From the NCBI GenBank assembly GCA_977030845.1, contig OZ365112.1, positions 13,020,001-13,084,000 on the forward strand: a stretch of DNA of 64,000 nt, written 5' to 3'. The notes below the pieces were generated by a model. That model searched no databases. It saw only the letters and a list, made by a program, of their open reading frames with translations, and had not been told where the DNA came from. Positions 36,769-53,600 of the stretch are shown in pieces; positions within the stretch are counted from its first letter, which is position 1, and each line of letters starts with the position of its first letter. Both the position numbers and the translations under genes were made by a program. Origin of the DNA: Fimbriosthenelais zetlandica (Eukaryota).

Positions 36769-39700
36769 TACTTGCCATTTCCATTGATATCAATCCATTC
36801 ACAGTCACCATGCAGCCACTCTTCACATTCCAACAAAAGCATCGATCAGCCTGAAAGGAATTAATAATCTAATTTTGCTAATAGATTTCGAGATACTCTT
36901 TGTCTTACTTGCCATTTCGATTGATATATCCATGGTACATCTCACTCTTCCCATTCCAACAGTCACGAGCAACAACTAACTCTTCACATTCCAACAAAGA
37001 CATCATCCTGAAAAGAATTATACAGGCCTATGGGTTAATTAATTTTGTCAATAGACTTCAAGATGTTCGTTGCCCTAAGTACTTGCCGTTTTCATTGATA
37101 TAAATCCATTCAAAGTTACTGGTCTGACAATCACTCCTCTCATTCCATCAGTCTTGAGCAACGCCCTGAAAAAAACAATGTTAATTAATTCTGCAAATGC
37201 ATGTAGATTTTGAAGTACTCATTGCCCTACTTGCCACTTCCTTTGATATAAAATCAATCCATCCAAAGCTTGCAGTATGACCCACATCACGCTCATTATA
37301 TTCCGATAAGAGCACCATCCTGAAAAGAGAACATCTTTATTAATTTTGCCAAAAGGTTTCAAAGTTTCTGATGCCCGAAGTACTTGCCATTTCCATTGAT
37401 ATAAATCGAAGGTTAGCAGTCTGGCACAAATCATTCTTCCCATTCCAACAGGAGCAAAATTCTGAAAAGAAAAGATGTTAATTTTGCAAATTATATTCTC
37501 GAACTAGGCCTACGTTACCAGTACCCTACCTGTCATTTCCTCCATTGGTATAAATCCATCGAAAGTTAACAGCAGTCTGGCACAAATAATTCTCCCCATT
37601 CCAACAAAAGAAACATCCTGAAAAAACAACATGATAATTTTGTTAATTATTATTTCGAACAAGACCTAGGCCCATTCATTGTCCTACTTGCCATTTCCGT
37701 TGATATAAATCCATTCAAAGCACCATGCAGCCACTCTTCACATTCCACCAAAAGCATCAATCATCCTGAAAAGAATTAAACATGTAAATTAATTTTGCTA
37801 ATAGATTTCAAAGCAGCCTATCTGATGCCCTAAGTACTTGCCATTTCCATTGATATCAATCGATTCACAGTCAACATGCAGCCACTCTTCACATTCCAAC
37901 AAAAGCATCGATCAGCCTGAAAAGAATTAATAATGTTAATTAATTTTGCTAATATATTTCGAGATACTCTTTGTCTTACTTGCCATTTCGATTGATATAT
38001 CCATGGTACATCTCACTCTTCCCATTCCAACAGTCACGAGCGGAGCAACAACCAACTCTTCACATTCCAACAAAAACATCATCCTGAAAAGAATTATATA
38101 TGTGTTAATTAATTTTGTCAATAGACTTCAAGATGTTCGTTGTCCTAAGTAGGCCTACTTGCCGTTCTCATTGATATAAATCCATTCAAAATTACTGGTC
38201 TGACAATCACTCCTCTCATTCCATCAGTCTTGAGCAACACCCTGAAAAAAACCAATGTTAATTAATTCTGCAAATGCATGTAGATTTTGAAGTACCCATT
38301 GCCCTACTTGCAAAATCAATCCATCCAAAGCTTGCAGTCTGAACCACATCACGCTTATTATATTCCGATAAGAGCACCATCCTGAAAAGAGAACATCTTT
38401 ATTAATTTTGCCAAAAGATTTCAAAGTTTCTGATGCCCGAAGTACTTGCCATTTCCATTGATATAAATCGAAGGTTAGCAGTCTGGCACAAATCGTTCTT
38501 TCCATTCCAACAGGAGCAACATTCTAAAAAGAAAACATGTTAATTTTGCAAATTATATTATCGAACTAGGCATACGTTACCAGTACCCTACCTGTCATTT
38601 CTTCCATTGATATATATCGATTGAAAGTTATCAGCAGTCTGGCACAAATCATTCTTCCCATTCCAACAAGAGAAACATCCTGAAAAAACAACATGATAAT
38701 TTTGTAATTATTATTTCAAACTCGACATAGGCCTATTCATTGTCCTACTTGCCATTTCCGTTGATATACATCCATTGAAATCACCATGCACCATTCACAT
38801 TCCAACAAAAGCATCGATCATCCTGAAAAGAATTAAACATGTAAATTAATTTTGCTAATAGATTTCAAAGCAGCCTATCTGATGCCCTAAGTACTTGCCA
38901 TTTCCATTGATATCAATCGATTCACAGTCAACATGCAGCCACTCTTCACATTCCAACAAAAGCATCGATCAGCCTGAAAAGAATTGAACATGTTAATTAA
39001 TTTTGCTAATAGATTTCGAGATACTCTTTGTCTTACTTGCCAAGTTGATTGATATATCCATGACACATCTCACTCTTCCCATTCCAACAGTCACGAGCAA
39101 CGACCAACTCTTCACATTCCAACAAAAACATCATCCTGAAAAGAATTATATGTGTTTATTAATTTTGTTAATCGACTTCAAAATGTTCGTTGCCCTAAGT
39201 ACTTGCCGTTTTCATTGATATAAATCCATTCAAAGTTACTGGTCTGACAATCACTCCTTTCATTCCATCAGTCTTGAGCAAAACCCTGAAAAAAACAATG
39301 TTAATTAATTCTGCAAATGCATGTAGATTTTGAAGTACTCATTGCCCTACTTGCCATTTCCTTTGATATAAAATCCATCCATCCAAAGCTTGCAGTCTGA
39401 CCCACATCACGCTCAATATATTCCAATAGAAGTAACATCCTGAAAGGACAGCATATTTATTAATTTTGTTAAAAGATTTCAACATTTCTGATGCCCGAAG
39501 TACTTGCCATTTCCATCGATATAAATTGAAGGTTAGCAGTCTGGCACAAATCATTCTTCCCATTCCAACAGGAGCAAAATATTCTGAAAAGAAAACATGT
39601 TAATTATGCAAATTATATTCTCGAACTAGGCCTAGACCTAGGCCTACATTACCAGTACCCTACCTGTCATTTCTTCCATTGATATATACATCCATTGAAA

Positions 39701-40850
39701 CTTAACAGTAGTCTGGCAAAAATCATTCTTCCCCTTGAAACATCCTGAAAAAGCAACAGGTTAATTTTGTTAATTTTTTCGATCTAGACCTAGGCCTATT
39801 CATTGTCCTAACGTTACTTGCCATTTCCGTTGATATACATCCATTGAAATCACCATGCACCATTCACATTCCAACAAAAGCATCAATCATCCTGAAAAGA
39901 ATTACACATGTAAATTAATTTCGCTAAAAGATTTCAAAGTAGCCTATCTGATGCCCTAAGTACTTGCCATTTCCATGCAGCCAGTCTTCACATTCCAAGT
40001 GACAAAAGCATTAATCAGCCTGAAAAAAATTGAACATGTTAATTCATTTTGCTAATAGATTTCGAAATACTCTTTGTCTTACTTGTCGATTTGATTGATA
40101 AATCCATGGCACATCTCATTCTTCCCATTCCAACAGTCACGAGCAACAACTAACTCTTCATATTCCAACAAAAACATCATCCTGAAAAGAATTATATGTG
40201 TTAATTAATTTTGTCAATAAACTTCAAGATGTCCGTTTCCCTAAGTACTTGCCGTTCTCATTGATATAAATCCATTCAAAGTTACTGGTCTGACAATCAC
40301 TCCTCTCATTCCATCAGTCTTGAGCAACACCCTGAAAAAAACCAATGTTAATTAATTCTGCAAATGCATGTAGATTTTGAAGTAGGCCTACTCATTGCCC
40401 TACTTGCCATTTCCTTTGATATAAAATCAATCCATCCAAAGCTTGCAGTATGACCCTCATCACGCTCATTATATTCCAATAGAAGCAACATCCTGAAAAG
40501 ACGTCTTTATTAATTTTGTCAAAAGATTTCAACATTTCTGATGCCCGAAGTACTCGCCATTTCCATTGATATAAACTGAAGGTTAGCAATCTGGCACAAA
40601 CTTTCTTCCCATTCCAACAGGATCAACATCCTGAAAAGAAAATAATAATTAATTTTGCTAATTATTATTTCTAACTAGGCCTATATTTGTTGTACTACTT
40701 GCCATTTCCATCGATATAAATCCATTCACAGTCACCTTCAGCCACTCTTCACATTGCAACAAAAGCATCAATCATCCTGAAAAGAATTAAACATTTTAAT
40801 TATTCTGGCTAATATATTTCGAAATACTTTTTGTCCCACTTGACATTTTC
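36769..40850. repeat. Satellite: ~150-bp monomers in a 7-mer higher-order repeat (~1.06 kb, ~3.8 copies), with decayed tail to ~41300
   Basis: Monomers start with TACTTGCC-like motifs; type-A monomers at 36769, 37835, 38892 and 39961 (periods 1066, 1057, 1069). Confidence 0.95.
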
Positions 40851-41510
40851 ATTCATATATATGGTATTATGTTCATCGTCCAATGTCCATAAAATTATAG
40901 TAATATATAGTGTGAAGAAGATTAAGTTATTATTACCTCATCCTGCCACTAGGTGGAAGGTCAGTGCTACTGCTGATCAACTGGTCATACCTGAGCTAAA
41001 TGACCAGTCTTACTCCTTCCACCGGTTGAAAATTTATCACATTTGGATCGCTCTTCCCATTTCAAAAGTCAGTTATGAGCAACAACCAGTTCTTCACATT
41101 CCAAACAAAGCATCATTCTGTAAAGAATGAAACATGTTAACTGGTCTTTTCATTTGAACAGTGTTAATTAATTTCCTTTAATTAGTTCAAACTAGCATAG
41201 GCTAGGCCTACTCATATTTCCCTACAATCCATTTTCCCTTGACATAAACGCATTCAATATCATCAGAGTCTTCAATACTCTTCTCAATCTCATCTCAACA
41301 GGTGCCGACACCAGTCCAAATCTATGACGAAATTCAAGTGTGAAATAAATGACAGGTCTAGTGTTTTCTGTTGCCACGAGAAATTTAATGACTCTTTTTT
41401 TCCAAGAAGTTATTTATCTATCATGACAGATGAATAAATATCTCTATTCATGTACACCATGCATTCAAGTCACATGAGAATAGTAAAAGTCTCATAATCA
41501 TTAATTTTCC

Positions 41511-41729
41511 ACTATAATACCGGACACACAGAGGCGATTTGTCCAAGCGATTCAGAGCGATAGAATATTTCTAGTCACAGCCAATGCTTGTAATTTTGTC
41601 GGTGGTTAGCCTTAGCTAGGTTTAAATGACTGTTCAAATTACAAGCATTGGTTTTTACTAGAAATATACTATCGCTCTGCATCGCTTGGGCAAATTTATC
41701 GCCTCTGTGTGGGCTATAGGCATTATAGT
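41511..41729. mobile_element. Foldback MITE with ~85-bp imperfect inverted arms
   Basis: ACTATAATACC...ACACAGAGGCGATTTGTCCAAGCGATTCAGAGCGATAG...CCAATGCTTGTAATTTTG is mirrored at 41634-41729. Confidence 0.85.
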
Positions 41730-43977
41730 TCTAAGCATAGGACGGCTTCACTGCACCACCTGGATCTTCCGGTCCAGAATAGACCCATTTTGGAACATTT
41801 AAACAATCACAGATACACAAAAACAATCCTCGTTACTCACAACAACTTTCTCTAACAAACTTTTGTAAGTTTAGCATATGGGGGGCCTTGAGAGCGTATT
41901 TTTCACTTCAAAATCTTTAAGGAATTAGATATATTTCAAGATGGCGTACACACCGCGTGGACTCACTGACACTGGGCAAGTTCATTTCATCAACAAGACT
42001 AATCATTCTGGTTGTACAACGATTTCTTTTGTCTAAAATGATGCATAAATACTTACCTTGTCGTAATTTTCATCATTTGATCCACGGAATTGCGATTTGA
42101 TCTCACTCATACGCTATTTGTTGCGAGCTCGAACTGGACGCATGGAGCCTTCGAATTTGCCACGTCACTACAGGTTACCACGAAGGACATACCCTATGTT
42201 GTCGCCGTGTAGTTCTAAGCGGAGATACCAAAAGTTGTCGCCGTGTAGTTCTAAGCTAAATCATTAGTTTTCCCGTTTGGCCCCTTCTTTATGTTTTATG
42301 GCTGCAATATGCACGTTATTATCCCAATAATGTTACGATAAACTGTAAAAACAAAACTATTTTGATATCCAACATTTTTATTGATTCGTCACATACGAGC
42401 TGTATAGATTAGGCTAGAAATGCTAGAGAAATTCTCACCTATATGTATTGGTTTTTGAAATCAAATCTGAACGGCCTAATGTAGGCTATGCAGAAAATAA
42501 CATAACATAGTATTGGCTAATTTTTTTTTCAATCATGACTAATAACAACGCCCGCCCACAAAGATCCAATTTAAGTTAGGCCTTATATGTGCCCTTAAAA
42601 TCAAATATATAGGCCTATTAGGCTAGGCTACTAAAACACGGACAATGAAGGAAGTTCTGGAGCGTCAAACCCTCATCCATTCCCCCCCCCCCGCCCGGCC
42701 CGCAACCTACCCACCCACCCCCTCCCTCCAACAAAACCCCCCTGAAAAATCTGGTTCCGCCCAGTGAAATATCGGTTACGTATGCCCATCTCTGTGACAT
42801 GCATTTTGGTTTATTTATTTATAGATATAGCCTATCATGAGCTCGGTAAAAAAAGAAGACAATAGTAAAAATGACGAAAATCGACAGCCCATTAGAGATA
42901 ATGAACACGCCATTCAATATTCACAAATCAGCAGATCCCCGCTTAACTCAGCAGTACCGTATATTACAGATTTGTCTCATCAGAAAAGACTTTTTTTGAT
43001 GAATATTCACTTTTTCAGAAATTTACGAACTAGGGCCTACCATACCGAATGCCGAAAACAAAATGCAATACGAAGATTTTCAGACATTTCATAATTTTCA
43101 ATAGGACTAAAATAATATTTATCATACTGTCATAAGGTTATGGCATAGTATCTTATATCCCAGAAAAGGGGGCAAAATCGATGTTATTTTTTTTAATTTA
43201 AAAAATCCTTTTATTATGATATTATAAGTCTTCATGTAGGCACCTAATACTTGTCAAAGGAGATCGACTTTAAGCCGATCAGCTACGAACCTGATGATTG
43301 GCATTACACAATTGACATGACATTTTGTTCTACACGTTTCCATTATTTTCATAGAAAATAATTCAGAGAGTATGCCCTTCTCCACCTCTTTAAATGGAGA
43401 TTAAAACTACGCATCAACATTAACTGATACCAATAATAGGTAAATCCTGAATTCAGAAAAGAATTCTTATTACTATTTTGAAGTCTATTTCTTAAATATA
43501 ATATACAAAGTCATAGGTTCAAAAGTCAGAGATCACAAGCTGCAAGACAAACGCTAAATGCAAAGACATGCATGAGCATTGATTCAAATCAATGCAGCAG
43601 AAAAGGCCTCATGGGAGCAGGTCATAGAACTGTACGGGTATCAATGACACTGACAAAAAAGGGGGAAAATTACTGAGAAAAATTATGCCAGGTATTTAAG
43701 AGATTCTCTGTGATATGCTAAAGCTGTGCTATGTGCGATACATTGGTCCAGTTCGTGTACAAATAGTAAATACAAAATGGGTACAAATAGAAAAATATAT
43801 AATTTGGCATGGCTAGCAGTCTTGTATGACATTGTTAACTTCAAAAATTACATGTACTATAATCCACTGTACATTTTGTATATATTTCTTGATAATCTCA
43901 GTCAATCTCAAAACTAGATAACAATGAATACATGTTATATAATAGACTAATATCAATGATATGGTAGGTATAGGTCA

Positions 43978-44681
43978 TCATAGTGGTGTGTCTCGGATCC
44001 TGACGTTATCTTCTGTTGGGGCAGAGTTTTCTCTGGCGGTGTTGGTCCCACTGCCTTCAGCTTTGGTGCTTCCATCTCCAGCCTCATCACGGTTCTCCAC
44101 CCTGGAGGAGGATGGAGCATTATTATGCTCCAGGGTACGATCATGGCCATCCAGGACATTGTCAAGATAACCCACCACTTGGTCAACACGGTGTAATGTC
44201 GAACTGCCAGCACTTTCTGAAGTGGCAGCATCTGACTGTCTCCGGCTTGAGTCACTGGAGGAGGTTGGGGGCTCTGTGTCTGAACATGCCTGATTATCGA
44301 AACATCCGCTTTCATCGGACTGAAGATCGAGGCCAGGGCGATGCCCAGTACCAGCCCTAGAGCGGTAGGTAGGTGGTCTGGATGTGGGGTAGTCTTCACC
44401 TTGTGGGGGGAAGGTTATATGAAGTCCTGGACGAATGGTGGAGGCACGAGATTTGTAAGATGGAGGTGGGGAGGAGGGTAAACTGTAGTTATCTTCAAGG
44501 GCATAAGACGGTGGGAGGTCAGCAGGGCATATACCTGAATTGTTATTGTCCAGGTTATTGTTATTAGGCTGAGAGTTATTGAGCTGGAGTTGTGCTAGCA
44601 TTAACTGTTGTTGGTATTCCTGCATGGAAGCGTTGTATGAGGGCGGGGGCCTCCGGTAACGGAACTCAGGATAGGACACAC
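43978..44681 (-). CDS. TM/PPxY gene last coding exon (PPPSY, LPPSY, PPPSY, PPTY; poly-Q/N)
   Basis: tctttacag acceptor, ORF 43978-44679, TGA at 43980-43978. Confidence 0.9.
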
Positions 44682-47600
44682 CTGTAAAGACAGAGGGAAA
44701 TTTGAATTAAAACAGTGTTAAATTATCATGATACAAATTTAATAAACCTACCACAATCAGTATCAGTTATCACTGCCATTCAGAGAACCAGAGTTCAACC
44801 TCAGCTTTAAGCAGATTTCACATGCCTCACTCACAAACTGTCATAATTAAATTTTCATTTTGAATAAGCTGCCATAAATAAACTAGAAATTCATGAAACA
44901 TAATTTATTATGAAATTCGGACTGGAGCATCAGTTTCATGTACTTTTTTTTACATGTCTTTTTAGTAGTTTCCTCCATTAATCGCGCCTCTCTCTACCAT
45001 CTCCCTCCCACATCCTCACATCACCCATATCAGACACTAGCCCAGGGCCCTGGCCACGTGCAGCTGTCTGTATAATGACATTTAATGCCACCATTTACTA
45101 GCCACAGATGCTGCCATTATACCTTTTTTAAACAGATAACCTCAAGCATACATGTCAGAACACTAAATGTGTGCAAATAAATCTCAGTTTTTGGACGTTA
45201 CATAAGGGAAAATCACAGAGCTTAACGGGAACTATTTAAGATGAAAAATGCTCTGTTTTATAACGTTTTAAACCTGTGGTTTTGCAGTAGTCTTTGGAAA
45301 CTTGAGTGAGAAGCAAATAAAGCCAGAGCAATGACCGAAATAAAACAGTGTATTGTAATCAATGGATCATAAATGCATACATGAGAGCGGTTTTCTTGTG
45401 TACACGGACATTAAACAGCTATGTGTTGGACCTGCCTCGAACCAACAAAAAAAAATAAAAGGAACAGGTAAAAGGTCGATCACAGGTATGGGGATGATGA
45501 CGGGTGGACATCCCTGGCAGAGATATATGAGGGGTGTCCAAATATGGGAGCAGAAACACAGGTATGACGGTGTTCACTGGGCTCACTGCCATACAATCAG
45601 ATCCCTATGAGAGACGAGGGAGTGATGGAAATAGAGTGGGAAACAATGAATCTAATAGAGGCATCTGATCAAGGTCTATTCTCAAACGGTTGGCCATCCC
45701 TTCAGCAGCTCTGACATTGGGAATATTAGAACTATGAACCGACACCAAGGAATATCTATGACGGCAAATGTGGACACCTTTATATACCCTTGAACAGCCC
45801 TAATCAATATTCTATATTCTACCACCCATATCACTCATTGATAGCCTACTACCCTATGTGCACAACCGCACCAGGAAACTAGCTGTGGCCATCTTTACCA
45901 AGCCTCCTGGAAGTGTGCCGCCACCTGGTCCGTGTTAACACTTTTTGTGGTCCACGGGCGGCTTGGTCAAATCACCTGTGGGTGGCTTGGTCAAACCACC
46001 TGTGCCGTGAGTGGCTTGGACAAACCACCCGTGGGTGGCTTCGACAAACCACCTTTGGATGGCTTAGACAAACCACTTGTGGATGGCTTGGTCAAACCAC
46101 CTGGAAGTGTGCCGCTACCTGGCCCATGTTAACACTTTTTGTGGTCCATGGGCGGCTTGGTCAAATCACCTGTGGGTGGCTTGACAAACCACCTGTGGGT
46201 GGCTAGGTCAAACCACCTGCGGACAAGGATTTCAAGCCAACTGTGGCTGATTTTAAACGGCGTTCTGCGACCAGCTAAAATTAGGCTTTTTTTTTTTTAA
46301 TTAATTAGGTGTTATATAAGCGGAATAATAATCCGATTTAGGGAATAAACAACAGTGGTTTATAAGCAATATTTTTATTGAATAATAACATAACACAATG
46401 CAATACATTATATTCACCTTTGATGTTAACCATAACCAAATGTTAGCCAAATACATGATATAAACTAATTCCATCTATCGTATCAATTTAAATTATTTCC
46501 AATGACAATATTGATACCTTGGTCTAAGTACATTTGTAATTACAAATTTCTGAGAAAAAAAATGTGTCATTGCCCATAGCCACCCTCCCTAACCTAATGT
46601 AATGAGTGTAATTTTTCACTGCTCTGTACCAAGCTCGTGGTAAATATGGTACTCATCAAACATACTCTTCATCAATACATGTATATTAAATAATTTACCG
46701 ATTTTTATACAGCACAGTCACCTATTATAGTTCAGAGCGCTTTGCAGTCATTATTACCCTTCGTCATTTCCACTCCTACTCTATGTATATAGTTAACATT
46801 TCTCACCTGCCTTATTAAAGAAGTATCATACGAAAATATACTTCTAGGTTTAGTTTAATATTTACGTTTAATTTAACATACCCTTAATCAAAACATTAAC
46901 TAAGTATATTTAGAAAAATATATAGCCTATCTAGCTTTAATCTAATACATAAGTTTAGCTTTAATCCAATAATTAAGTTTAACTTAATATTCTTGAACCG
47001 GTCACAGAACTTGAGGTACTCTTGTCTCTGCAGCTTTTTCTGTGGCCCTCTTTTTCCTGCTATATAGAACATGCATTGGCACCCAGCAAACGTTTACAGC
47101 AAAGATTTTGTGTTTTTACCCTTTGGCCAGCAACTATAATCTATATTACAATAACTTCTATATGACAAAGTAGTGCTGTACAAATCTGCTATATATATGG
47201 TGATATAATATTATTGCCGATTTCAAAGACATATACAATGTAATCAAAACTCAAGGGTACAAAACAAATGGCGAACTTTATGTTTCCAAACTAACACGAA
47301 CTATATGTCACAAAGCTTATTTAGATATAAGGATACACAATTTCTGTAACCAAAATTGTGCAACAATAACTGGGAAATACTTCTTTTTTAGATGGAACTT
47401 ACAAAATTTCGTCACGCATTTTATGTCTAATATTCCCATTTATGATTTATTAATTTTATCCTCGAGATGCAAGCTTCCATGTGAAACTGAATGGAACATA
47501 GTATTATATATTACATTAGTTTCAAAAATAAGACTAGTGATTTTATTAAATATTCAAATTATATTATTGAGAGGGTCATTATATCCCTGTTTATTTAATC

Positions 47601-50600
47601 TACAGGGCAGTAGTTAGTTATACATTTTCCTCAGCACTTCCATTTCATAATTTACACCTTGCCCACCATATAATTTATCTCATGTCAAAGTCACAAACTA
47701 TGTAAAATACAACTCACATTAATACAAATAATTCATGAAAATCCGCAAATACCTATTTAAATCGTTCACATTACAAAAATATCAATATCCAGAGGAGTGC
47801 AGACCTTTTTGGCAAGGTCCCATCCCAAGGTTTGGGCATCTCCCAGCAGCCTTGTGATTTGCCCTTCTCGCCCATGTTGCTCGTCATTAGATCCATCTCT
47901 ATCGAACCTTGTTTAACTGTTTGATAGTAGTCTCTGATCTATGGATGACTCTCTAGGCATTGTCTAATCGCATCTGAAAAAACAAATATAAGGACTTTTC
48001 AGTGACAATAATACTTTTTAAAAATCCACAAATAATACCAAAAAAAGGGATTGAAATATAGAGGCGGGAAAGCTACCTTGTTTCAATTGTGTTGAATGAT
48101 TTTGCTGCCAATGGATGAAGTGCTGGTGACAAGCAAAGCAGCCCTGTCATTCAAGCGAATCTGGAAATGGCAAGGAAATAAAATGATTAGCACAATGTAC
48201 CTTAAAAGTATATCTGAAAAGTGGGTTATTTTCATCTTTCATTAGTAAGTAGAGCATTTTTGCAAAAATTAATAATCTACCCTTTAGAACAAATATATTA
48301 TTTACAAGTACATGAGGAGTCAATATAATACGACCTGCTGGTCTACTTTAATAAATACCACTTATAAAATACCATCTGGTCAGTTTTAACTGCTTCTTGT
48401 ATACTGGCAGTAGGCGGTCAAGATAAGCCTCTGATATAGTTATCATGTCTTACACAATCATGCCCGGTCAACGGTTGACAAGTCGGGCCCAATAAAATGC
48501 ATAGAGCAACAATGGGAGTTGGGTATAGGTATAAAGTACTAAAATGTATGGAATGCTGGGCGGTTAGAGTTATTTTGTCCCTCTAACTTGTATGGGTTAT
48601 TTTTGGTCAAAATTTAGACCATGGGCCAGATCATACATCCCCGTACAGCCCACCCCCTATAACCACCACCACATGTCCAAATGACCAAACACGTGGTGCT
48701 AGGCTTATATCAGATACAATATAATGGTGTGTACACAATAGTCCGTGTATAGTGCTATCACTGTATATATATCGCTAACTCAATATTATTTCATTCTTTT
48801 GCATAGTTCTTAATTTCTCCTATTCATTTCAAATTTAGTTGCACCTAGCATGCATATTACAATATTCTATTTTCTGTCAATACATATATCGTCATCCCTT
48901 TAGTAGAACTAGAAGCTTTAAAACTTCTACCCACGTGCTAGCTAGTGTGTGTGAGACGGGGCGGGGAGGGGTGTCTCCCGTCAGAGAGACTACACTCTGT
49001 GCCCGAGGAGTAAAATCAGAGTGAGGGTACAAGTGGGTATGTATGCGTGGGGAATATGAGAGCCAGCCAGTGGTGGGGGGAATTAAACCATAGTCCGGTA
49101 TATAGTCCTATTATCCCCATGCAGGCCCTAACATTTCTGTATGTAAAATGCATACTGAGCTCTAAGAAGCTAAGATGTTTAAATAGCAACTATATTGATA
49201 TGATCTATCCATAATCTTCTCACACTTCATAAATGTCTTAGGAATGATAAGGATTGTGAACTCTATCAGCCATTCCGATCTGTCTACAACATTCCTCATA
49301 CTAAACTCTCCAAGTTGCATGTCCAAGCGCCACGTGAGTTGGAGTGCTTGTAAGATTGCAAACTAATAGCTAAAATAAAAAACCTAGAAAATAGGGCTCT
49401 AAAACTAAAACAAAGTTCCATATCGGGACTGTCAGTTTCTGGGTTCAGTAGTCAAATATTTTCAATAAAATGAATAATACTTAGCTTTATGTACGGTCAC
49501 AGCAGAAGAGGAGACCGTCCCCCCTTCCATTCACAGAGACGTCAGTTTTGAAAAGAACTTTTGAATGTGCGCCACGTGACTAAAATCACGTGACCAATCT
49601 GTGCAACTTCCTGTTGCTGGAGAGAGGACTCTGAGCCGACTGGAGACGGCTGGGCAGACACGCCCAAGGCTTCATATGTCTCTCATGCGCCATCTAACAT
49701 ATTGGAAGCTGAATAGTATATCATTCCATGATGTTATCACTATTTGCATTTGTCACCTGAAATATAAAAATAATTACAATAGGTATACTATGATCATGAG
49801 ACCAGTATGAAAAATTTGTTTCAATAAGGAAATTTTGAGTTGCAGAATAATACTAAAGTTTTATTGGTATAATCAAAGTAGGCCCAATAATTCTTCTAGT
49901 AAATAGGCCTAATAGTACTGATTATAATACGGGAAGTACATTAAATCCATGCCTATGTGTATACCGCATTCAGTATACAAAAATGGGGAACAATGGTGAG
50001 AAAAGGGTAGAAAATTAATTTAACACCTTTACATACCTTATGATTGGTAAGATGTGTTCGAGATGAATGATTTCGATGACTTGATGTAGATGCTCAGGGT
50101 CCAATTTTACTTATTAATTTGTTATTACATGTTTCCCTCCTTCTGTTGGGGGCGGCAAGCATCCCGTGGGTCTGCTTCACATAGACGCTGACGTGATGGG
50201 AGATTATGTGGGGATGGCAAGCCTCCCTTGGGTCTGCTTCGCATAGACACCTATGGGACAGGGCCATGTGTGGGGATGGCAAGCCTCCCTTGGGTCTGCT
50301 TCACATAGACACCTATGGGACAGGGCCATGTGTGGGGATGGCAAGCCTCCCGTGGATCTGCTTCACATAGACATCTATGGGACAGGGCCATGTGTGGGGA
50401 TGGCAAGCCTCCCTTGGGTCTGCTTCACATAGACACCTATGGGACAGGGCCATGTGTGGGGATGGCAAGCCTCCCGTGGGTCTGCTTCACATAGACATCT
50501 ATGGGACAGGGCCATGTGTGGGGATGGCAAGCCTCCCTTGGGTCTGCTTCACATAGACATCTATGGGACAGGGCCATGTGTGGGGATGGCAAGCCTCCCG

Positions 50601-53600
50601 TGGGTCTGCTTCACATAGACACCTATGGGACAGGGCCATGTGTGGGGATGGCAAGCCTCCCTTGGGTCTGCTTCACATAGACACCTATGGGACAGGGCCA
50701 TGTGTGGGGATGGCAAGCCTCCCTTGGGTCTGCTTCACATAGACACCTATGGGACAGGGCCATGTGTGGGGATGGCAAGCCTCCCGTGGATCTGCTTCAC
50801 ATAGACACCTATGGGTTGGGACCTTATTTGGGGATAGCAAGCCGCCGTTGGTCAGCTTCAAATACACACTGATAAACCATCAGAGCTATGATTTTGAGTT
50901 CCTTATATTAAGGACACCTGAATTCATATATATGGAGAAAAATCTTCTTTGCCATGTCATTTAGACGTTGTAGAGCCAATTCGTTTTGCAGAAATAGGTG
51001 CACAAATTTTTTTAGTCCATATGTGTCTACATGAAGCCCCCAATGGACGACGGTATTTATTTATTAGGTTTGAACACAGAAGCAATTGCTTCCTCAACAT
51101 GAATAATATTGATAATGATATTATAGAGTGTCTGTCACATCTAAATGTGTGATAGACAATATACTATGAATAAATAACAAGTAACTGAGGGTTTTTAATT
51201 TCCCTGGCTTGGCACAGACGGTAATGGACAACAGACGGCAACCATGTTCTATTTGTGGGAGAGTGGTCCATTTGTGGGGACGGGAGGCTTGTCCAAGCTG
51301 GAGACGGGTTATCCCCATCCACAACCCACTTATGGACCACTCATGGCAAGCCTTGTGCACATAGGGTACCAGTAAGTTAATGACACATAAATATACCCAA
51401 CTATCATCCTGTGGCCTTTCCCAGTGCAGTTTTGATTTAGGAGGTTAATATTGAGTTAATTCAGATTAATGTTTAATGAATTAACCAAAGGGCCGCTTTA
51501 TGGATATCAAGGTATCAATTAACCAGTTTATAGAGGAGTACAGACTTTTAATAGAGTAAATACGGTATACCACACGCAAACACATACATCTCCTACTCTC
51601 TCAACAATCCTTGCTTTTCACCCAGTACAAAACCATCACACTCACCACAGGAGCTTTCATGTGAACGTCAAAAAACATCCACCTACTTCAATTCAGCACT
51701 CTGAACAGGTTTCACCCCACTTTAGGAATCCCTACAAGTGTCAAAACAACTGTTTTCTCTACTCTGATATGTGACCTCACAATTCACGAATTTTCACGAA
51801 AAAAGAAAGGCCTCGCAATGCCTGAGGTAAAGATTACAATTAAGTGAAGTGAGATTAGTGGTTTAGATAACGAAAGAGCATAATGGTATAATTAAATAGT
51901 TTTCCTGCATTGTTTCCTAAGAGATTGGACCTACCAGTATAGCAGTGTTTGGAACCAGCATTACACCACCATTACCACTACTTGTACCAGCATCTGATAA
52001 CACGACTATCTCCATCAACCCCTATCCACCCCTATAGACCAAACGCACAAACACAATAAGAGAAAAATACACTCAACCTTTCTGCTCTTTTTTTATTTTT
52101 AAGCGATAGGCCGGCAGCTAGGTTTGTGCGTTATTCCTGCTACAATGTAATTGCTAATTTATTTTTCCATTTTCATCAGTATCTCATACTTTCACATTTC
52201 GTCCTTCTCTCCTGTCAATGTCTTAGCCAACTATCCCTTCTTTAAAACATCCATCTATTATTCTCTTACCTAATATAAAGTTACAAAACAAGTTATATCT
52301 CTATATTTAGGATATTGTAAAGAAATAGAGGAAAAGACACCTGAGATAGGGGTGGGGGTGTGAGTGGTGGGAGAGGAGGGGGGCACTTAACTATCTCAGG
52401 ACCCCTATCACTTTCCACCTTCATGCTAAACACATAATGCTTCCCCCATATTGCACGACCAGCATGCTGGGAAGTATGGGAGGGGGCAGCATGGGGCTCA
52501 GTCTATCTAACCACTTCAGAAGACTTATACCCCACCTCCATTTCAACTGAACAACACATAAACCATTATTGTTCACTCGTTTACTGCTTCCAAAACGAAT
52601 GGAACACCTTCGTTCACAAGTCAATAGCAAATGAAAACAAAATACAATGAAAAGCTTTTCTCTTGATATTGATTGGGCAAATATTACACAGGTGGAAACT
52701 GGGCTTAAGTGCCACTTTCCCTGAGGGTAGGGATTCCTACTGTTCACTGCCCGTAATAATGCAAATCGTGCAGAGACAACTACAGGTCTGCAAAGTATGA
52801 TAGGACTTTTCTATGACTTATTCATTTTTTCTGTCTAAAAGCAGCAGCCCAGCTCTTTGAAGTATTTATTTAGATTTCTCCATTATTCTAAAAGAGGAGA
52901 ATATTAAACATTGTTTTAAAGAATTAGCTGAATTAGTTTGTAGTCCGTCATATAAGTGCAAAAATAAATATTTGGATAAAATAGTTCATTCAAAATAGCA
53001 TGAGATGGTCTATAAAAACCATTAAACACTTCAAACAATCAGAGATCTGTGTGTAGCTATGGAAACATGGCTGGGAACACTTGCTGGGGCGGTATACATA
53101 GCAGCTTCTCACGACTCCCCAATGGGAAAGTTCCTATAGGTATTTTGCCCAACTCGATAGTCAAACTCTTTTTTGTTGACTTTAGAATTCAATGATTGAC
53201 AAATATATACCGCATGATTTTAGCCAAGTATGTTTAGACAAGCCTTCCAAGAATTCAAGGGCATCTAACACCACATATGTGAATTTAATTTTTAAATTAT
53301 GTTGTTACTTTTTAACCTTCTTATGAGGACCTCGTCGCAGAACGGGGACAAATGAATTTTACATTTATACAGGTTTTTATTTATAATGTACCCAACATTT
53401 TCCAGGAAGGGACAACCCGGTTTCCATGTCTTGCGGAAGTGAATGGGAAATATTGATGGAACACCACCAGAATGGGTTATAGGGCCCGGGAAATTGGCAA
53501 GGAAAATGTCACTTGACTATAAAGGAAATGATCGATTTCCACTGCTCGTTATCCCTGTAGGAACATAGTAGTATATCCATCCCTGGCCTAGATATATTTA

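What the first reader, a model, noticed from the sequence alone, without database searches (positions are those of the whole stretch)
37023..40390. HOR copies record independent TA -> TAGGCCTA / TAACGTTA insertions (footprint-like mutation process)
Seen, using the other three cassettes as the ancestral state: AAGTA^CTTGCC becomes AAGTAGGCCTACTTGCC only in copy 2 (38150-38157); GAAGTA^CTCATT becomes GAAGTAGGCCTACTCATT only in copy 4 (40383-40390); GTCCTA^CTTGCC becomes GTCCTAACGTTACTTGCC only in copy 3 (39809-39816). Copy 1 has ATTATACAGGCCTATG where the others have ATTATA(TA)TG (37023-37030). Each clean event duplicates the TA and adds a 4-bp palindrome. Inference: excision footprints of TA-targeting transposons with GGC...GCC and ACG...CGT ends, whose 3-nt overhangs anneal through a 2-bp overlap. 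The same model explains the TAGGCTA, TAGCCTA and TACATGTA motifs seen elsewhere in the window. Three to four events in 4 kb would imply very high local cut-and-paste traffic.
Basis: partly seen in the sequence, partly recalled or inferred. Interest (0 to 1): 0.75.

Follow-up and report, generated by a model that had tools for sequence, protein, structure and literature searches.

The report
Six-letter scars at TA sites
Copies of a short tandem repeat in this animal (probably mollusc-like) genome differ by clean six-letter insertions at TA sites; these are most likely scars left when a still-unidentified jumping gene cut itself out, and in this 8-kb stretch they arose about as often per TA as single-letter changes did per base.

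Summary
Aligning the four ~1.06-kb cassettes confirms private 6-bp insertions at TA: GGCCTA in copy 2 (38152-38157) and copy 4 (40385-40390), and ACGTTA in copy 3 (39811-39816). Copy 1 (37021-37030) needs an extra substitution to fit. TAGGCCTA occurs 17 times against about 1 expected, and 15 of the 17 lie in 35.4-43.05 kb.

New here:
- The hits fall repeatedly on two homologous TA positions of the 150-bp monomer.
- The pre-insertion sites share a symmetric AG|TA|CT preference and avoid T before TA.
- The 7-bp forms TAGGCTA/TAGCCTA cluster in the same domain. A 3-nt-overhang model with GGC...GCC ends predicts them, by analogy with Sleeping Beauty's TAC(A/T)GTA.
- Scars number about one per 7-15 point substitutions.

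Caveats:
- No element with TA|GG..CC|TA ends is in the window, and no sequencing run was listed, so the donor transposon is still unidentified.
- The 12-bp extra in copy 3 is a copy of a neighbouring monomer, not a new scar.
- TACATGTA is enriched but lies only outside this domain, and its polarity could not be tested.

Earlier notes of this scan report the same motif on other DNA of this genome. I read this as excision footprints of a TA-targeting cut-and-paste element (about 0.6).

The parts
36761..40862 (.). Tandem array. Four higher-order cassettes of about 1.06 kb: c1 36744/36761-37809, c2 37810-38866, c3 38867-39935, c4 39936 to about 40690. A degenerate continuation runs to about 41300. 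Each cassette holds 7 monomers of about 150 bp (m_a to m_g).
   Evidence: Self-BLAST, alignment A1, TRF period 151. Substitution-only identity is 96.8% for c1-c2, about 94% for c3 and about 92% for c4.
38150..38157 (.). TAGGCCTA private to c2. It is a 6-bp insertion at the TA just before CTTGCC ('site D') of monomer m_c. The site after insertion, AAGTAGGCCTACTT, is a 14-bp palindrome.
   Evidence: The other three cassettes and all other monomers read TACTTGCC.
39809..39816 (.). TAACGTTA private to c3. It is a 6-bp insertion at the same homologous TA ('site D') in monomer m_g.
   Evidence: This is the only TAACGTTA in the window.
40383..40390 (.). TAGGCCTA in monomer m_d of c4. It is a 6-bp insertion at 'site X' (TTTTGAAG-TA-CTCATTG). 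The m_d monomers of c1-c3 have the short form.
   Evidence: The flanks on both sides are identical to the other m_d copies, so a copying tract would be confined to the octamer.
37021..37030 (.). TACAGGCCTA in c1, a non-canonical event. It equals a c2-like (TA)3 plus GGCCTA plus T>C, with a private T>G three bases downstream.
39627..39646 (.). Chain TA|GGCC|TA|GACC|TA|GGCC|TA in c3 m_f. The extra 12 bp carries the rare GACC unit otherwise seen only in m_g (39785-39798), so it was copied from the neighbouring monomer rather than being a new scar.
37505..37512 (.). Older TAGGCCTA at site X of m_f in c1. It is inherited by the other cassettes: c2 38567-38574 has decayed to TAGGCATA, and c3 has it at 39639-39646.
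   Evidence: The decayed copies show these are heritable genomic sequence, not an assembly artefact.
39785..39798 (.). m_g site X chain TA|GACC|TA|GGCC|TA in c3. Homologues lie at 37661-37674 (c1, decayed) and 38722-38735 (c2, decayed).
39940..39946 (.). TAGCCTA, the 7-bp form, at site X of m_a in c4. c2 (37814-37820) and c3 (38871-38877) read CAGCCTA.
40676..40683 (.). TAGGCCTA at site X of the f/g-type monomer that closes c4.
41198..41210 (.). Chain TA|GGC|TA|GGCC|TA at site X of a degenerate f/g-type monomer beyond the array.
36556..36576 (.). Chain TA|GGGCC|TA|CCGG|TA|GGCC|TA just left of the array. It can also be read as the 16-bp palindrome GGCCTACCGGTAGGCC.
36752..36766 (.). Chain TA|GGCC|TA|GGCCC|TA at the left boundary of the array.
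42610..42630 (.). TA|GGCC|TA, then T, then TA|GGC|TA|GGC|TA.
35409..35729 (.). Three isolated TAGGCCTA at 35409, 35453 and 35722. TAGGCTA lies just outside this span at 35769 and 36473.
35400..43050 (.). The scar-rich domain. It holds 15 of 17 TAGGCCTA, 9 of 17 TAGGCTA/TAGCCTA, 3 of 4 TAGGGCCTA/TAGGCCCTA and 0 of 13 TACATGTA. Of its 28 GGCC tetramers, 15 have TA on both sides, against 2 of 132 outside.
   Evidence: CpG observed/expected is 0.5-0.8 across 30-44 kb, which contains the domain, against 0.3-0.45 in 1-30 kb.

Best explanation
The 6-bp inserts are excision footprints of a TA-targeting cut-and-paste DNA transposon that works like IS630-Tc1-mariner elements.

**Proposed steps**
1. The element integrates at a TA and duplicates it.
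2. On excision, the non-transferred strand is cut 2-3 nt inside each end. Each flank keeps TA plus a short 3' overhang made of the element's terminal bases.
3. End joining seals the gap.

**Products expected**
- With ends GGC...GCC, the overhangs pair through a perfect 2-bp GC overlap and give TA-GGCC-TA.
- Full 3-nt overlap with a central mismatch gives TA-GGC-TA or TA-GCC-TA.
- A second family with ACG...CGT ends gives TA-ACGT-TA.
- Each scar recreates two TAs, so re-insertion and re-excision build the TA-punctuated chains.

**Shown**
- The inserts are derived.
- They are TA-bounded.
- They have a constant core whatever the flank.
- They recur at AG|TA|CT-like sites.
- They are concentrated in one 7.6-kb domain.

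**Inferred**
- The transposon itself, which was not found.
- Its end sequence.
- The 3-nt stagger.
- The reason for the local concentration. Candidates are a preference for hypomethylated, promoter-flanking DNA or local hopping.
For: 1. Derived state. Three of four cassettes, and all other monomer types, have plain TA at the three clean sites.
2. Constant core with different flanks. There are 12 TAGGCCTA in unrelated or only paralogous contexts. In the domain, 15 of 28 GGCC tetramers are TA-flanked on both sides, against 2 of 132 outside.
3. Enrichment. TAGGCCTA occurs 17 times against 0.99 expected and is the top outlier of the 256 palindromic octamers.
4. The predicted minor products TAGGCTA/TAGCCTA are enriched (17 against 6.4) and co-localise, with 9 of 17 in the domain (P 5e-5). 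This mirrors Sleeping Beauty, whose canonical scars are TACAGTA/TACTGTA. Those arise from 3' overhangs left when the non-transferred strand is cut inside the element (PMC6943129).
5. Symmetric target preference. T at position -1 occurs in 1 of 24 half-sites against 31% background (P 0.0016). AG at positions -2/-1 occurs in 7 of 24 against 7.6% (P 0.0016). The consensus is AG|TA|CT.
6. Recurrent hits on the same two homologous TAs by two different cores, GGCC and ACGT. This points to a site preference of the inserting machinery, not to one sequence being copied.
7. Chains of TA-punctuated units.
8. Decayed older copies (TAGGCATA, TAGGCCCA, TAGACCTA, CAGCCTA) show a long-running heritable process.
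9. Unchecked earlier notes of this scan report the same TA to TAGGCCTA change in other repeats and in LINE coding sequence of this genome.
Against: - No element, MITE or shared terminal sequence with TA|GG(C)...(G)CC|TA ends is in the 64-kb window, although at least two events are very young: c1 and c2 differ by only 3.2%.
- None of the scan's earlier notes names such an element.
- GG-starting ends are not the ends I know (from memory) for Tc1/mariner/pogo elements, and Sailor TIRs usually start GT or CC (PMC8533490).
- In a natural two-genome comparison in rice, most excision sites were messy, with deletions or fillers; only 8 of 94 left exactly the two copies of the target-site duplication (PMC4423477). 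The scars here are strikingly uniform.
- The implied rate is very high: a scar per TA about as often as a substitution per base.
- The copy 1 event is non-canonical.
Confidence: 0.6

Rival explanations
1. The inserts come from an insertion process that is not a classical TA-duplicating Tc1/mariner cycle. One version is an undescribed element that enters T^A without any duplication and has AGGCC...GGCCT ends; on the page this cannot be told apart from TA|GGCC...GGCC|TA. Another version is a domesticated or host nuclease whose breaks at TA are sealed with a fixed palindromic filler.
For: - The inserted hexamer can be written equally well as AGGCCT placed inside T^A.
- No donor element was seen.
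- GGCC-type ends are, from memory, typical of PIF/Harbinger-like elements rather than Tc1/mariner.
- PHIS groups are known with very varied target duplications, including none (Spy) and 2 bp (ISL2EU) (PMC4482050).
- The scars concentrate in a less CpG-depleted, promoter-like domain. From memory, that recalls the promoter-proximal preference of mPing.
- The products are uniform.
Against: - No PHIS group described in PMC4482050 has a TA or T^A target; their targets are TWA, A|AT|T, ANT, CWG and C|TNA|G.
- The 7-bp forms and the second core (ACGT) fit staggered cuts at two different element families better than one fixed filler.
- No enzyme that inserts a fixed hexamer is known to me.
Confidence: 0.2
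2. The inserts are short-tract copying from TAGGCCTA motifs already present in neighbouring monomers, with no transposon involved in these particular events. The route would be template switching, polymerase-theta-type templated insertion, or very short gene conversion.
For: - TAGGCCTA pre-exists in every cassette at the m_f and m_g monomers.
- The 12-bp extra in c3 carries the rare GACC unit of m_g and is best read as copying.
- c4's TAGGCCTACTCAT is shared with the degenerate monomer at 41203.
- TA/TAC microhomology exists at the entry and exit points.
Against: - In the paralogues that carry the motif, the bases directly next to the octamer differ from those at the c2 and c4 sites. A copied tract would therefore be 8-13 bp at most.
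- The nearest possible templates are about 580-820 bp away.
- The ACGT insert has no template in the window.
- This does not explain how the first copies arose, why the insert is always at a TA, or the isolated sites at 35409, 35453, 35722, 42610, 49904 and 61588.
- Earlier unchecked notes report the same change in unrelated repeats.
Confidence: 0.12
3. The long forms are ancestral, and the short TA forms arose by precise 6-bp deletions between the TA repeats.
For: At site X the long form is widespread: f/g-type monomers, m_a, c4 m_d and the 41.2-kb monomer all carry it.
Against: - At each clean site one copy is long and three are short. For the c2 and c3 events all other monomer types are short as well.
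- m_b (4 of 4) and m_d of c1-c3 have plain TA in an otherwise conserved context.
- The reading would need many independent, exact deletions.
Confidence: 0.04
4. The pattern is an assembly or sequencing artefact, or chance.
For: No reads could be laid on the region, because no run was listed.
Against: - Poisson P is about 1e-15.
- Older copies have decayed by point mutation and were inherited through cassette duplication.
- No known platform error inserts a fixed hexamer at TA (own knowledge).
Confidence: 0.02

Closest known systems
Sleeping Beauty (Tc1/mariner) canonical excision footprint TAC(A/T)GTA
   Same: - The TA is duplicated.
- The extra bases are the element's terminal 3 nt, left as 3' overhangs and joined by end joining (PMC6943129).
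- TAGGCTA/TAGCCTA here are the exact formal analogue, and TAGGCCTA is the 2-nt-overlap product.
   Different: - The core is GGC/GCC, not CAG/CTG.
- The 8-bp product is as common as the 7-bp one.
- No donor element has been identified.
- The scars are fixed germline changes that accumulated in a natural genome, not products of an assay.
Tc1 of C. elegans, 2-nt stagger giving a TA-CATG-TA scar (own knowledge, not checked in a paper here)
   Same: It has the form TA + 2 nt + 2 nt + TA, a palindromic octamer. TACATGTA is itself enriched in this window (13 against 2.3).
   Different: TACATGTA lies only outside the TAGGCCTA domain (0 of 13 inside). No paralogue shows that it is an insertion here.
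PIF/Harbinger-ISL2EU-Spy (PHIS) superfamily
   Same: - TIRs usually start with G or A, and GG or GGG in some groups.
- Target duplications are very varied, including 2 bp and none (PMC4482050).
- From memory, mPing has GGCC ends and prefers promoter-proximal sites.
   Different: - The described targets are TWA, A|AT|T, ANT, CWG and C|TNA|G, none of them TA.
- Here the duplication is 2-bp TA, and T before TA is avoided.
Sailor (DD82E) elements, reported in molluscs
   Same: It is a TA-rich-target member of the IS630-Tc1-mariner group. An earlier scan note reports a Sailor-type remnant in this genome.
   Different: Its duplication is TATA and its TIRs start GT or CC (PMC8533490). That could fit TACCGGTA but not TAGGCCTA, and most sites here are not TATA.
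Genome-wide excision scars between Asian and African rice
   Same: It is natural evidence that DNA-transposon excision is a sizeable source of small indels (PMC4423477).
   Different: In rice most scars are irregular, with deletions or fillers. Here one uniform product dominates and the donor is unknown.

Membership tests
IS630-Tc1-mariner excision footprint | The insert sits at a TA, and the TA is present on both sides afterwards. | tested here: met
   All three clean events, and all TAGGCCTA/TAACGTTA sites with a paralogue, show this.
IS630-Tc1-mariner excision footprint | The extra bases equal the first and last 2-4 nt of the element, so they are palindromic for an element with inverted repeats and independent of the flank. 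| tested here: inconclusive
   Palindromy and flank-independence are met. A match to real element ends could not be tested because no element was found.
IS630-Tc1-mariner excision footprint | A family of elements with TA-flanked inverted repeats and matching termini exists in the same genome. | not testable with these tools
   Only this 64-kb window is readable. It holds none. No eukaryote genome collection was on hand, and the scan's earlier notes name none.
IS630-Tc1-mariner excision footprint | Alternative repair products of the same overhangs occur alongside (7-bp form, chains). | tested here: met
   TAGGCTA/TAGCCTA occur 17 times against 6.4 expected, with 9 of 17 in the domain (P 5e-5). 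Chains are listed.
IS630-Tc1-mariner excision footprint | Symmetric, palindromic target-site preference around TA. | tested here: met
   The consensus is AG|TA|CT. T at -1 occurs in 1 of 24 half-sites and AG in 7 of 24. Some of the sites are paralogous, so the sample is not fully independent.
IS630-Tc1-mariner excision footprint | Filled, empty and scarred alleles segregate in populations. | not testable with these tools
   The look-up of sequencing runs listed no run.
PIF/Harbinger and other PHIS groups | Target duplication is TWA (or AT, ANT, CWG, TNA, or none at AAA|TTT). | tested here: not met
   The duplication is 2-bp TA within GTAC/CTAC contexts, and no TTA/TAA is at the sites. The definitions are from PMC4482050.
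Sailor (DD82E) | TATA duplication, and TIRs starting GT or CC. | tested here: not met
   10 of the 12 pre-insertion sites are not TATA (the exceptions are 40676 and 42610), and the core is GGCC. The definition is from PMC8533490.
Templated insertion / short-tract conversion | An identical template lies nearby and extends into at least one flank. | tested here: inconclusive
   This is met for the 12-bp extra in c3. It is not met for the c2 and c3 6-bp events. For c4 it is possible but limited to 13 nt.

The most novel reading that the evidence does not exclude
This genome harbours a so-far undescribed TA-specific cut-and-paste system with three properties:
- GG(C)...(G)CC ends;
- an AG|TA|CT target;
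- a preference for hypomethylated, promoter-flanking DNA.

It would be either a low-copy 'hit-and-run' transposon or a domesticated transposase. Its uniform 6-bp palindromic scar would be a leading class of small insertion there. Scars would arise per TA about as often as substitutions arise per base, so the density of TAGGCCTA would map past germline transposon traffic.
Probability: 0.25. Interest if true: 0.7.

Novelty: new member of a known kind. Interest (0 to 1): 0.45.

Why it matters
If these are excision scars, the tandem array is a natural recorder: dated duplicate copies give the polarity, the site preference and a rate for a germline insertion-and-excision cycle that normally leaves no trace. 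The rate found here, one scar per 7-15 substitutions and confined to a 7.6-kb domain, would make transposon excision a major local source of small insertions. Over-represented TA-NNNN-TA octamers would then serve as a genome-wide map of past transposon traffic and of the chromatin it preferred. The scars would also point to an element family whose ends (GGC...GCC) are not among the usual Tc1/mariner ends. The pattern has already been noted many times on other DNA of this genome by this scan. This locus is therefore one of the cleaner polarised examples, not a first discovery.

Tried and rejected
**Searches for the donor element in the window**
- TAGG...CCTA pairs with extended inverted repeats within 8 kb gave nothing.
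- Any TA-flanked inverted repeat with a 9-nt seed within 6 kb gave only chance or palindrome-driven pairs. 18001/19817 share 13 of 16 nt around TACATGTA, which is not convincing.
- Clustering the 24 nt after every TAGG on both strands recovered only the array's own paralogues and the 62-bp satellite.
- Listing all TAGGC/GCCTA half-sites showed no shared terminal sequence.
- The inverted-repeat scan of 34.5-43.5 kb found one MITE-like palindrome at about 41526-41711 with CACACAG ends, which is not TA|GG.

**Population and comparative data**
- No sequencing run was listed.
- No orthologous locus was available. The best protein relatives of the neighbouring PPxY-rich ORF are 40-53% identical where named (bivalves; up to 61% over half the query for unnamed contigs), and the best contig had no DNA on hand.

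**Literature**
- The octamer appears only in unrelated oligonucleotides.
- PHIS and Sailor definitions were read and rejected for membership.

**Coding test of the array**
- The monomers look like exon (56-104 nt) plus intron units on the minus strand.
- Exon lengths differ between cassettes by 4, 5, 11 and 15 nt. The same nucleotides are open in different frames in different monomers. Pfam found nothing.

**Other negatives**
- Rfam and tRNA scans found nothing.
- A young 400-bp duplicate (33.26-34.19 kb, 98% identical) shows no TA-bounded indel.

**Readings rejected**
- Long-form-ancestral, artefact and hairpin/P-nucleotide readings. P nucleotides would mirror the local flank, not a constant GGCC.
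Full report
**What is there**

The stretch 36761-40862 is a tandem array of four higher-order cassettes of about 1.06 kb (c1-c4), with a degenerate continuation to about 41.3 kb. Each cassette is built of seven monomers of about 150 bp, which I call m_a to m_g. Counting substitutions only, c1 and c2 are 96.8% identical, c3 is about 94% identical to them, and c4 about 92%.

On the minus strand every monomer looks like a short exon followed by a short intron, with a TTTTCAG acceptor and a GGCAA|GTA donor. Three results argue against a current coding role:
- Exon lengths differ between cassettes by 4, 5, 11 and 15 nt.
- The same nucleotides are open in different frames in different monomers.
- Pfam finds nothing.

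I treat the array as non-coding DNA that may descend from a repeated exon.

The array lies between a PPxY-rich terminal ORF on the minus strand (43978-44679) and an ORF at 34813-35241. The named relatives of the first ORF are bivalve and bryozoan proteins at 33-53% identity. The genome is therefore an animal, probably a mollusc or another lophotrochozoan, with no close relative in the protein collection.

**Check of the observation**

| Copy | Insert | Coordinates | Ancestral site |
|---|---|---|---|
| c2 | GGCCTA | 38152-38157 | AAGTA\|CTTGCC |
| c4 | GGCCTA | 40385-40390 | GAAGTA\|CTCATT |
| c3 | ACGTTA | 39811-39816 | GTCCTA\|CTTGCC |

Each duplicates a TA and adds a 4-bp palindrome.

The c1 event (TACAGGCCTA, 37021-37030) is not clean. 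The simplest reading is a c2-like ATTATATATG that gained GGCCTA and then a T>C, with another private change three bases downstream.

Of the 8 private insertions of 4 bp or more in the alignment, 5 are of this TA-bounded kind. It carries the rare unit GACC that is otherwise found only in the neighbouring m_g monomer, so it is a local copy, not a new scar.

**Statistics**

- TAGGCCTA occurs 17 times against 0.99 expected under an order-3 Markov model.
- It is the strongest outlier among all 256 palindromic octamers; TACATGTA is second at 13 against 2.3.
- Fifteen of the 17 lie in 35.40-43.05 kb, which is 12% of the window (binomial P 1.6e-12).
- In that domain 15 of 28 GGCC tetramers have TA on both sides, against 2 of 132 elsewhere.
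- After allowing for copies inherited through cassette duplication, I count about 11-13 independent events in the domain.

**What the monomer-level comparison adds**

I aligned the intron-like parts of all 28 monomers. The events fall on two homologous TA positions.

*Site D* is the TA directly before CTTGCC. It was hit in c2 m_c by GGCC and in c3 m_g by ACGT.

*Site X* has the context TTTCRARR-TA-YTCNTTG. Its states are:
- plain TA in all four m_b monomers and in the m_d monomers of c1-c3;
- TAGGCCTA in the m_d monomer of c4;
- TAGGCCTA, or a decayed form of it, in every f/g-type monomer, including those at 40676 and 41198;
- the 7-bp form TAGCCTA in m_a (CAGCCTA in c2 and c3).

The monomer at 41.2 kb is f/g-type, so the c4 m_d insertion stays private among m_d monomers. 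Its flanks are identical to the other m_d copies right up to the octamer. The short form is therefore ancestral at all three clean sites, but 'independent' should be read as 'recurrent hits on a hotspot'.

I removed the insert from 12 sites and symmetrised the flanks. The result is a target preference of AG|TA|CT:
- T directly before TA occurs in 1 of 24 half-sites against 31% background (P 0.0016).
- AG occurs in 7 of 24 against 7.6% (P 0.0016).

Some of these sites are paralogous, so the test is somewhat optimistic.

**Mechanism**

A constant core that does not depend on the flank rules out hairpin or P-nucleotide and snap-back models. Those would mirror the local sequence.

The pattern is what Tc1/mariner-type excision gives:
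- The non-transferred strand is cut a few nucleotides inside the element.
- The flanks keep TA plus a 3' overhang made of the element's end.
- End joining leaves TA + terminal bases + TA.

For Sleeping Beauty the canonical scars are TACAGTA and TACTGTA (PMC6943129).

With GGC...GCC ends the same logic predicts two products. One is TAG(G/C)CTA, from full overlap with a central mismatch. The other is TAGGCCTA, from a perfect 2-bp GC overlap. Both are present here, and the 7-bp forms co-localise with the 8-bp form: 9 of 17 lie in the domain (P 5e-5).

Stacked chains fit re-use of the TAs that each scar recreates. Examples are:
- TA|GGGCC|TA|CCGG|TA|GGCC|TA at 36556-36576;
- TA|GGC|TA|GGCC|TA at 41198-41210;
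- TA|GGC|TA|GGC|TA at 42619-42630.

Decayed older copies (TAGGCATA, TAGGCCCA, TAGACCTA, CAGCCTA) show that the process has run for a long time and that the inserts are real, heritable sequence.

**Rate**

In columns 17-800 of the alignment the cassettes carry 6, 8, 18 and 29 private substitutions (c1-c4). They carry about one private scar each. That is roughly one scar per 7-15 substitutions.

The full-length cassettes hold 67-71 TA sites each. A TA in this array has therefore gained a scar about as often as a base has been substituted. So 'very high local traffic' follows, if the footprint reading is right.

Across 30-44 kb, which contains the domain, CpG is less depleted (observed/expected 0.5-0.8) than in 1-30 kb (0.3-0.45). 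The domain holds promoter-like CpG-containing stretches at about 35.9 kb and 41.9-42.8 kb. This fits the earlier, unchecked scan notes that such fields flank promoters. It is correlation only.

**What is missing**

The donor element is missing. Four different scans found no TA-flanked inverted-repeat element and no shared terminal sequence starting GG(C) in the window. The only MITE-like palindrome in the domain, at about 41526-41711, has CACACAG ends.

Other routes to the donor or to polymorphism data were also closed:
- No sequencing run was listed, so segregating alleles could not be examined.
- No related genome DNA was available.

Known groups I checked do not fit:
- PHIS groups duplicate TWA, AT, ANT, CWG or TNA, or nothing (PMC4482050).
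- Sailor duplicates TATA and has GT or CC ends (PMC8533490).

In the rice comparison most natural excision scars were irregular (PMC4423477). The uniformity here needs the extra assumption that the GC/GC overlap makes one product strongly favoured.

**Rivals**

1. An undescribed element or enzyme that places AGGCCT inside T^A, which is formally the same data (0.2).
2. Short-tract copying from TAGGCCTA already in the array (0.12). This clearly explains the 12-bp event. For c2 and c4 it would need tracts of no more than 8-13 bp and templates 0.6-0.8 kb away. It has no template for ACGT.
3. Long form ancestral (0.04).
4. Artefact or chance (0.02).

**TACATGTA**

The motif is enriched and sits in unique contexts. 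All 13 copies lie outside the TAGGCCTA domain, and no paralogue gives polarity. If these are scars, they belong to a different element with a different regional preference or age.

**Verdict**

The matching transposon remains unidentified.

The scan has already noted the same motif on other DNA of this genome many times. This locus is a well-polarised example that also allows a rate estimate.

Noticed in passing
window 1-64000 (13 sites, e.g. 1832, 18001, 19817, 54974, 55505): TACATGTA is enriched (13 against 2.3 expected) and all copies sit in unique contexts. All 13 lie outside the TAGGCCTA domain, mostly in the CpG-depleted part of the window.
   Followed up: partly
window 35453-35464 and 43031-43044; also 36559-36574: GGCCTACCAT follows TA twice in the same orientation. 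About 0.1 such repeats are expected given 28 GGCCTA. GGCCTACC also forms the 16-bp palindrome at 36559-36574. It could be a longer remnant of an element end or just stacked scars.
   Followed up: partly
window 41526-41711: A MITE-like palindromic element with arms of about 75 nt, roughly 90% complementary over 60 nt (CACACAGAGGCGAT...ATCGCCTCTGTGTG), and no TA duplication.
   Followed up: partly
window 42199-42256 and 41735-41745: The 23-nt direct repeat GTTGTCGCCGTGTAGTTCTAAGC occurs twice, 35 bp apart. Its last 11 nt (TAGTTCTAAGC) occur again at 41735. The surrounding stretch is the most CpG-rich of the window (observed/expected 0.82).
   Followed up: no
window 35316-35340 and 42690-42725: G-rich and C-rich runs in inverted orientation (GGGGGTGGGTGGGT...TTGCG) near both edges of the scar-rich domain.
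   Followed up: no
window 43978-44679 (-): A 233-codon ORF with several PPxY motifs, probably the last exon of a gene. The named hits are uncharacterised bivalve and bryozoan proteins at 33-53% identity, and there is no Pfam domain.
   Followed up: partly
window 50147-50869; 45956-46219; 33257-34187: Three other repeats: a 62-bp tandem repeat of 11.7 units (92% matches, no indels), 24/48-bp tandem repeats, and a 98%-identical tandem duplicate aligned over about 400 bp with an AAAC microsatellite. None shows TA-bounded indels.
   Followed up: partly
window 36761-40862 (-): The monomers mimic exon plus intron units with good splice-site look-alikes. Two of the scars sit at positions +4 to +9 of the putative donor, changing GTACTT to GTAGGC and GTAGGA to GTAACG. 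The frames are not conserved, so the array is probably a decayed repeated-exon array.
   Followed up: partly
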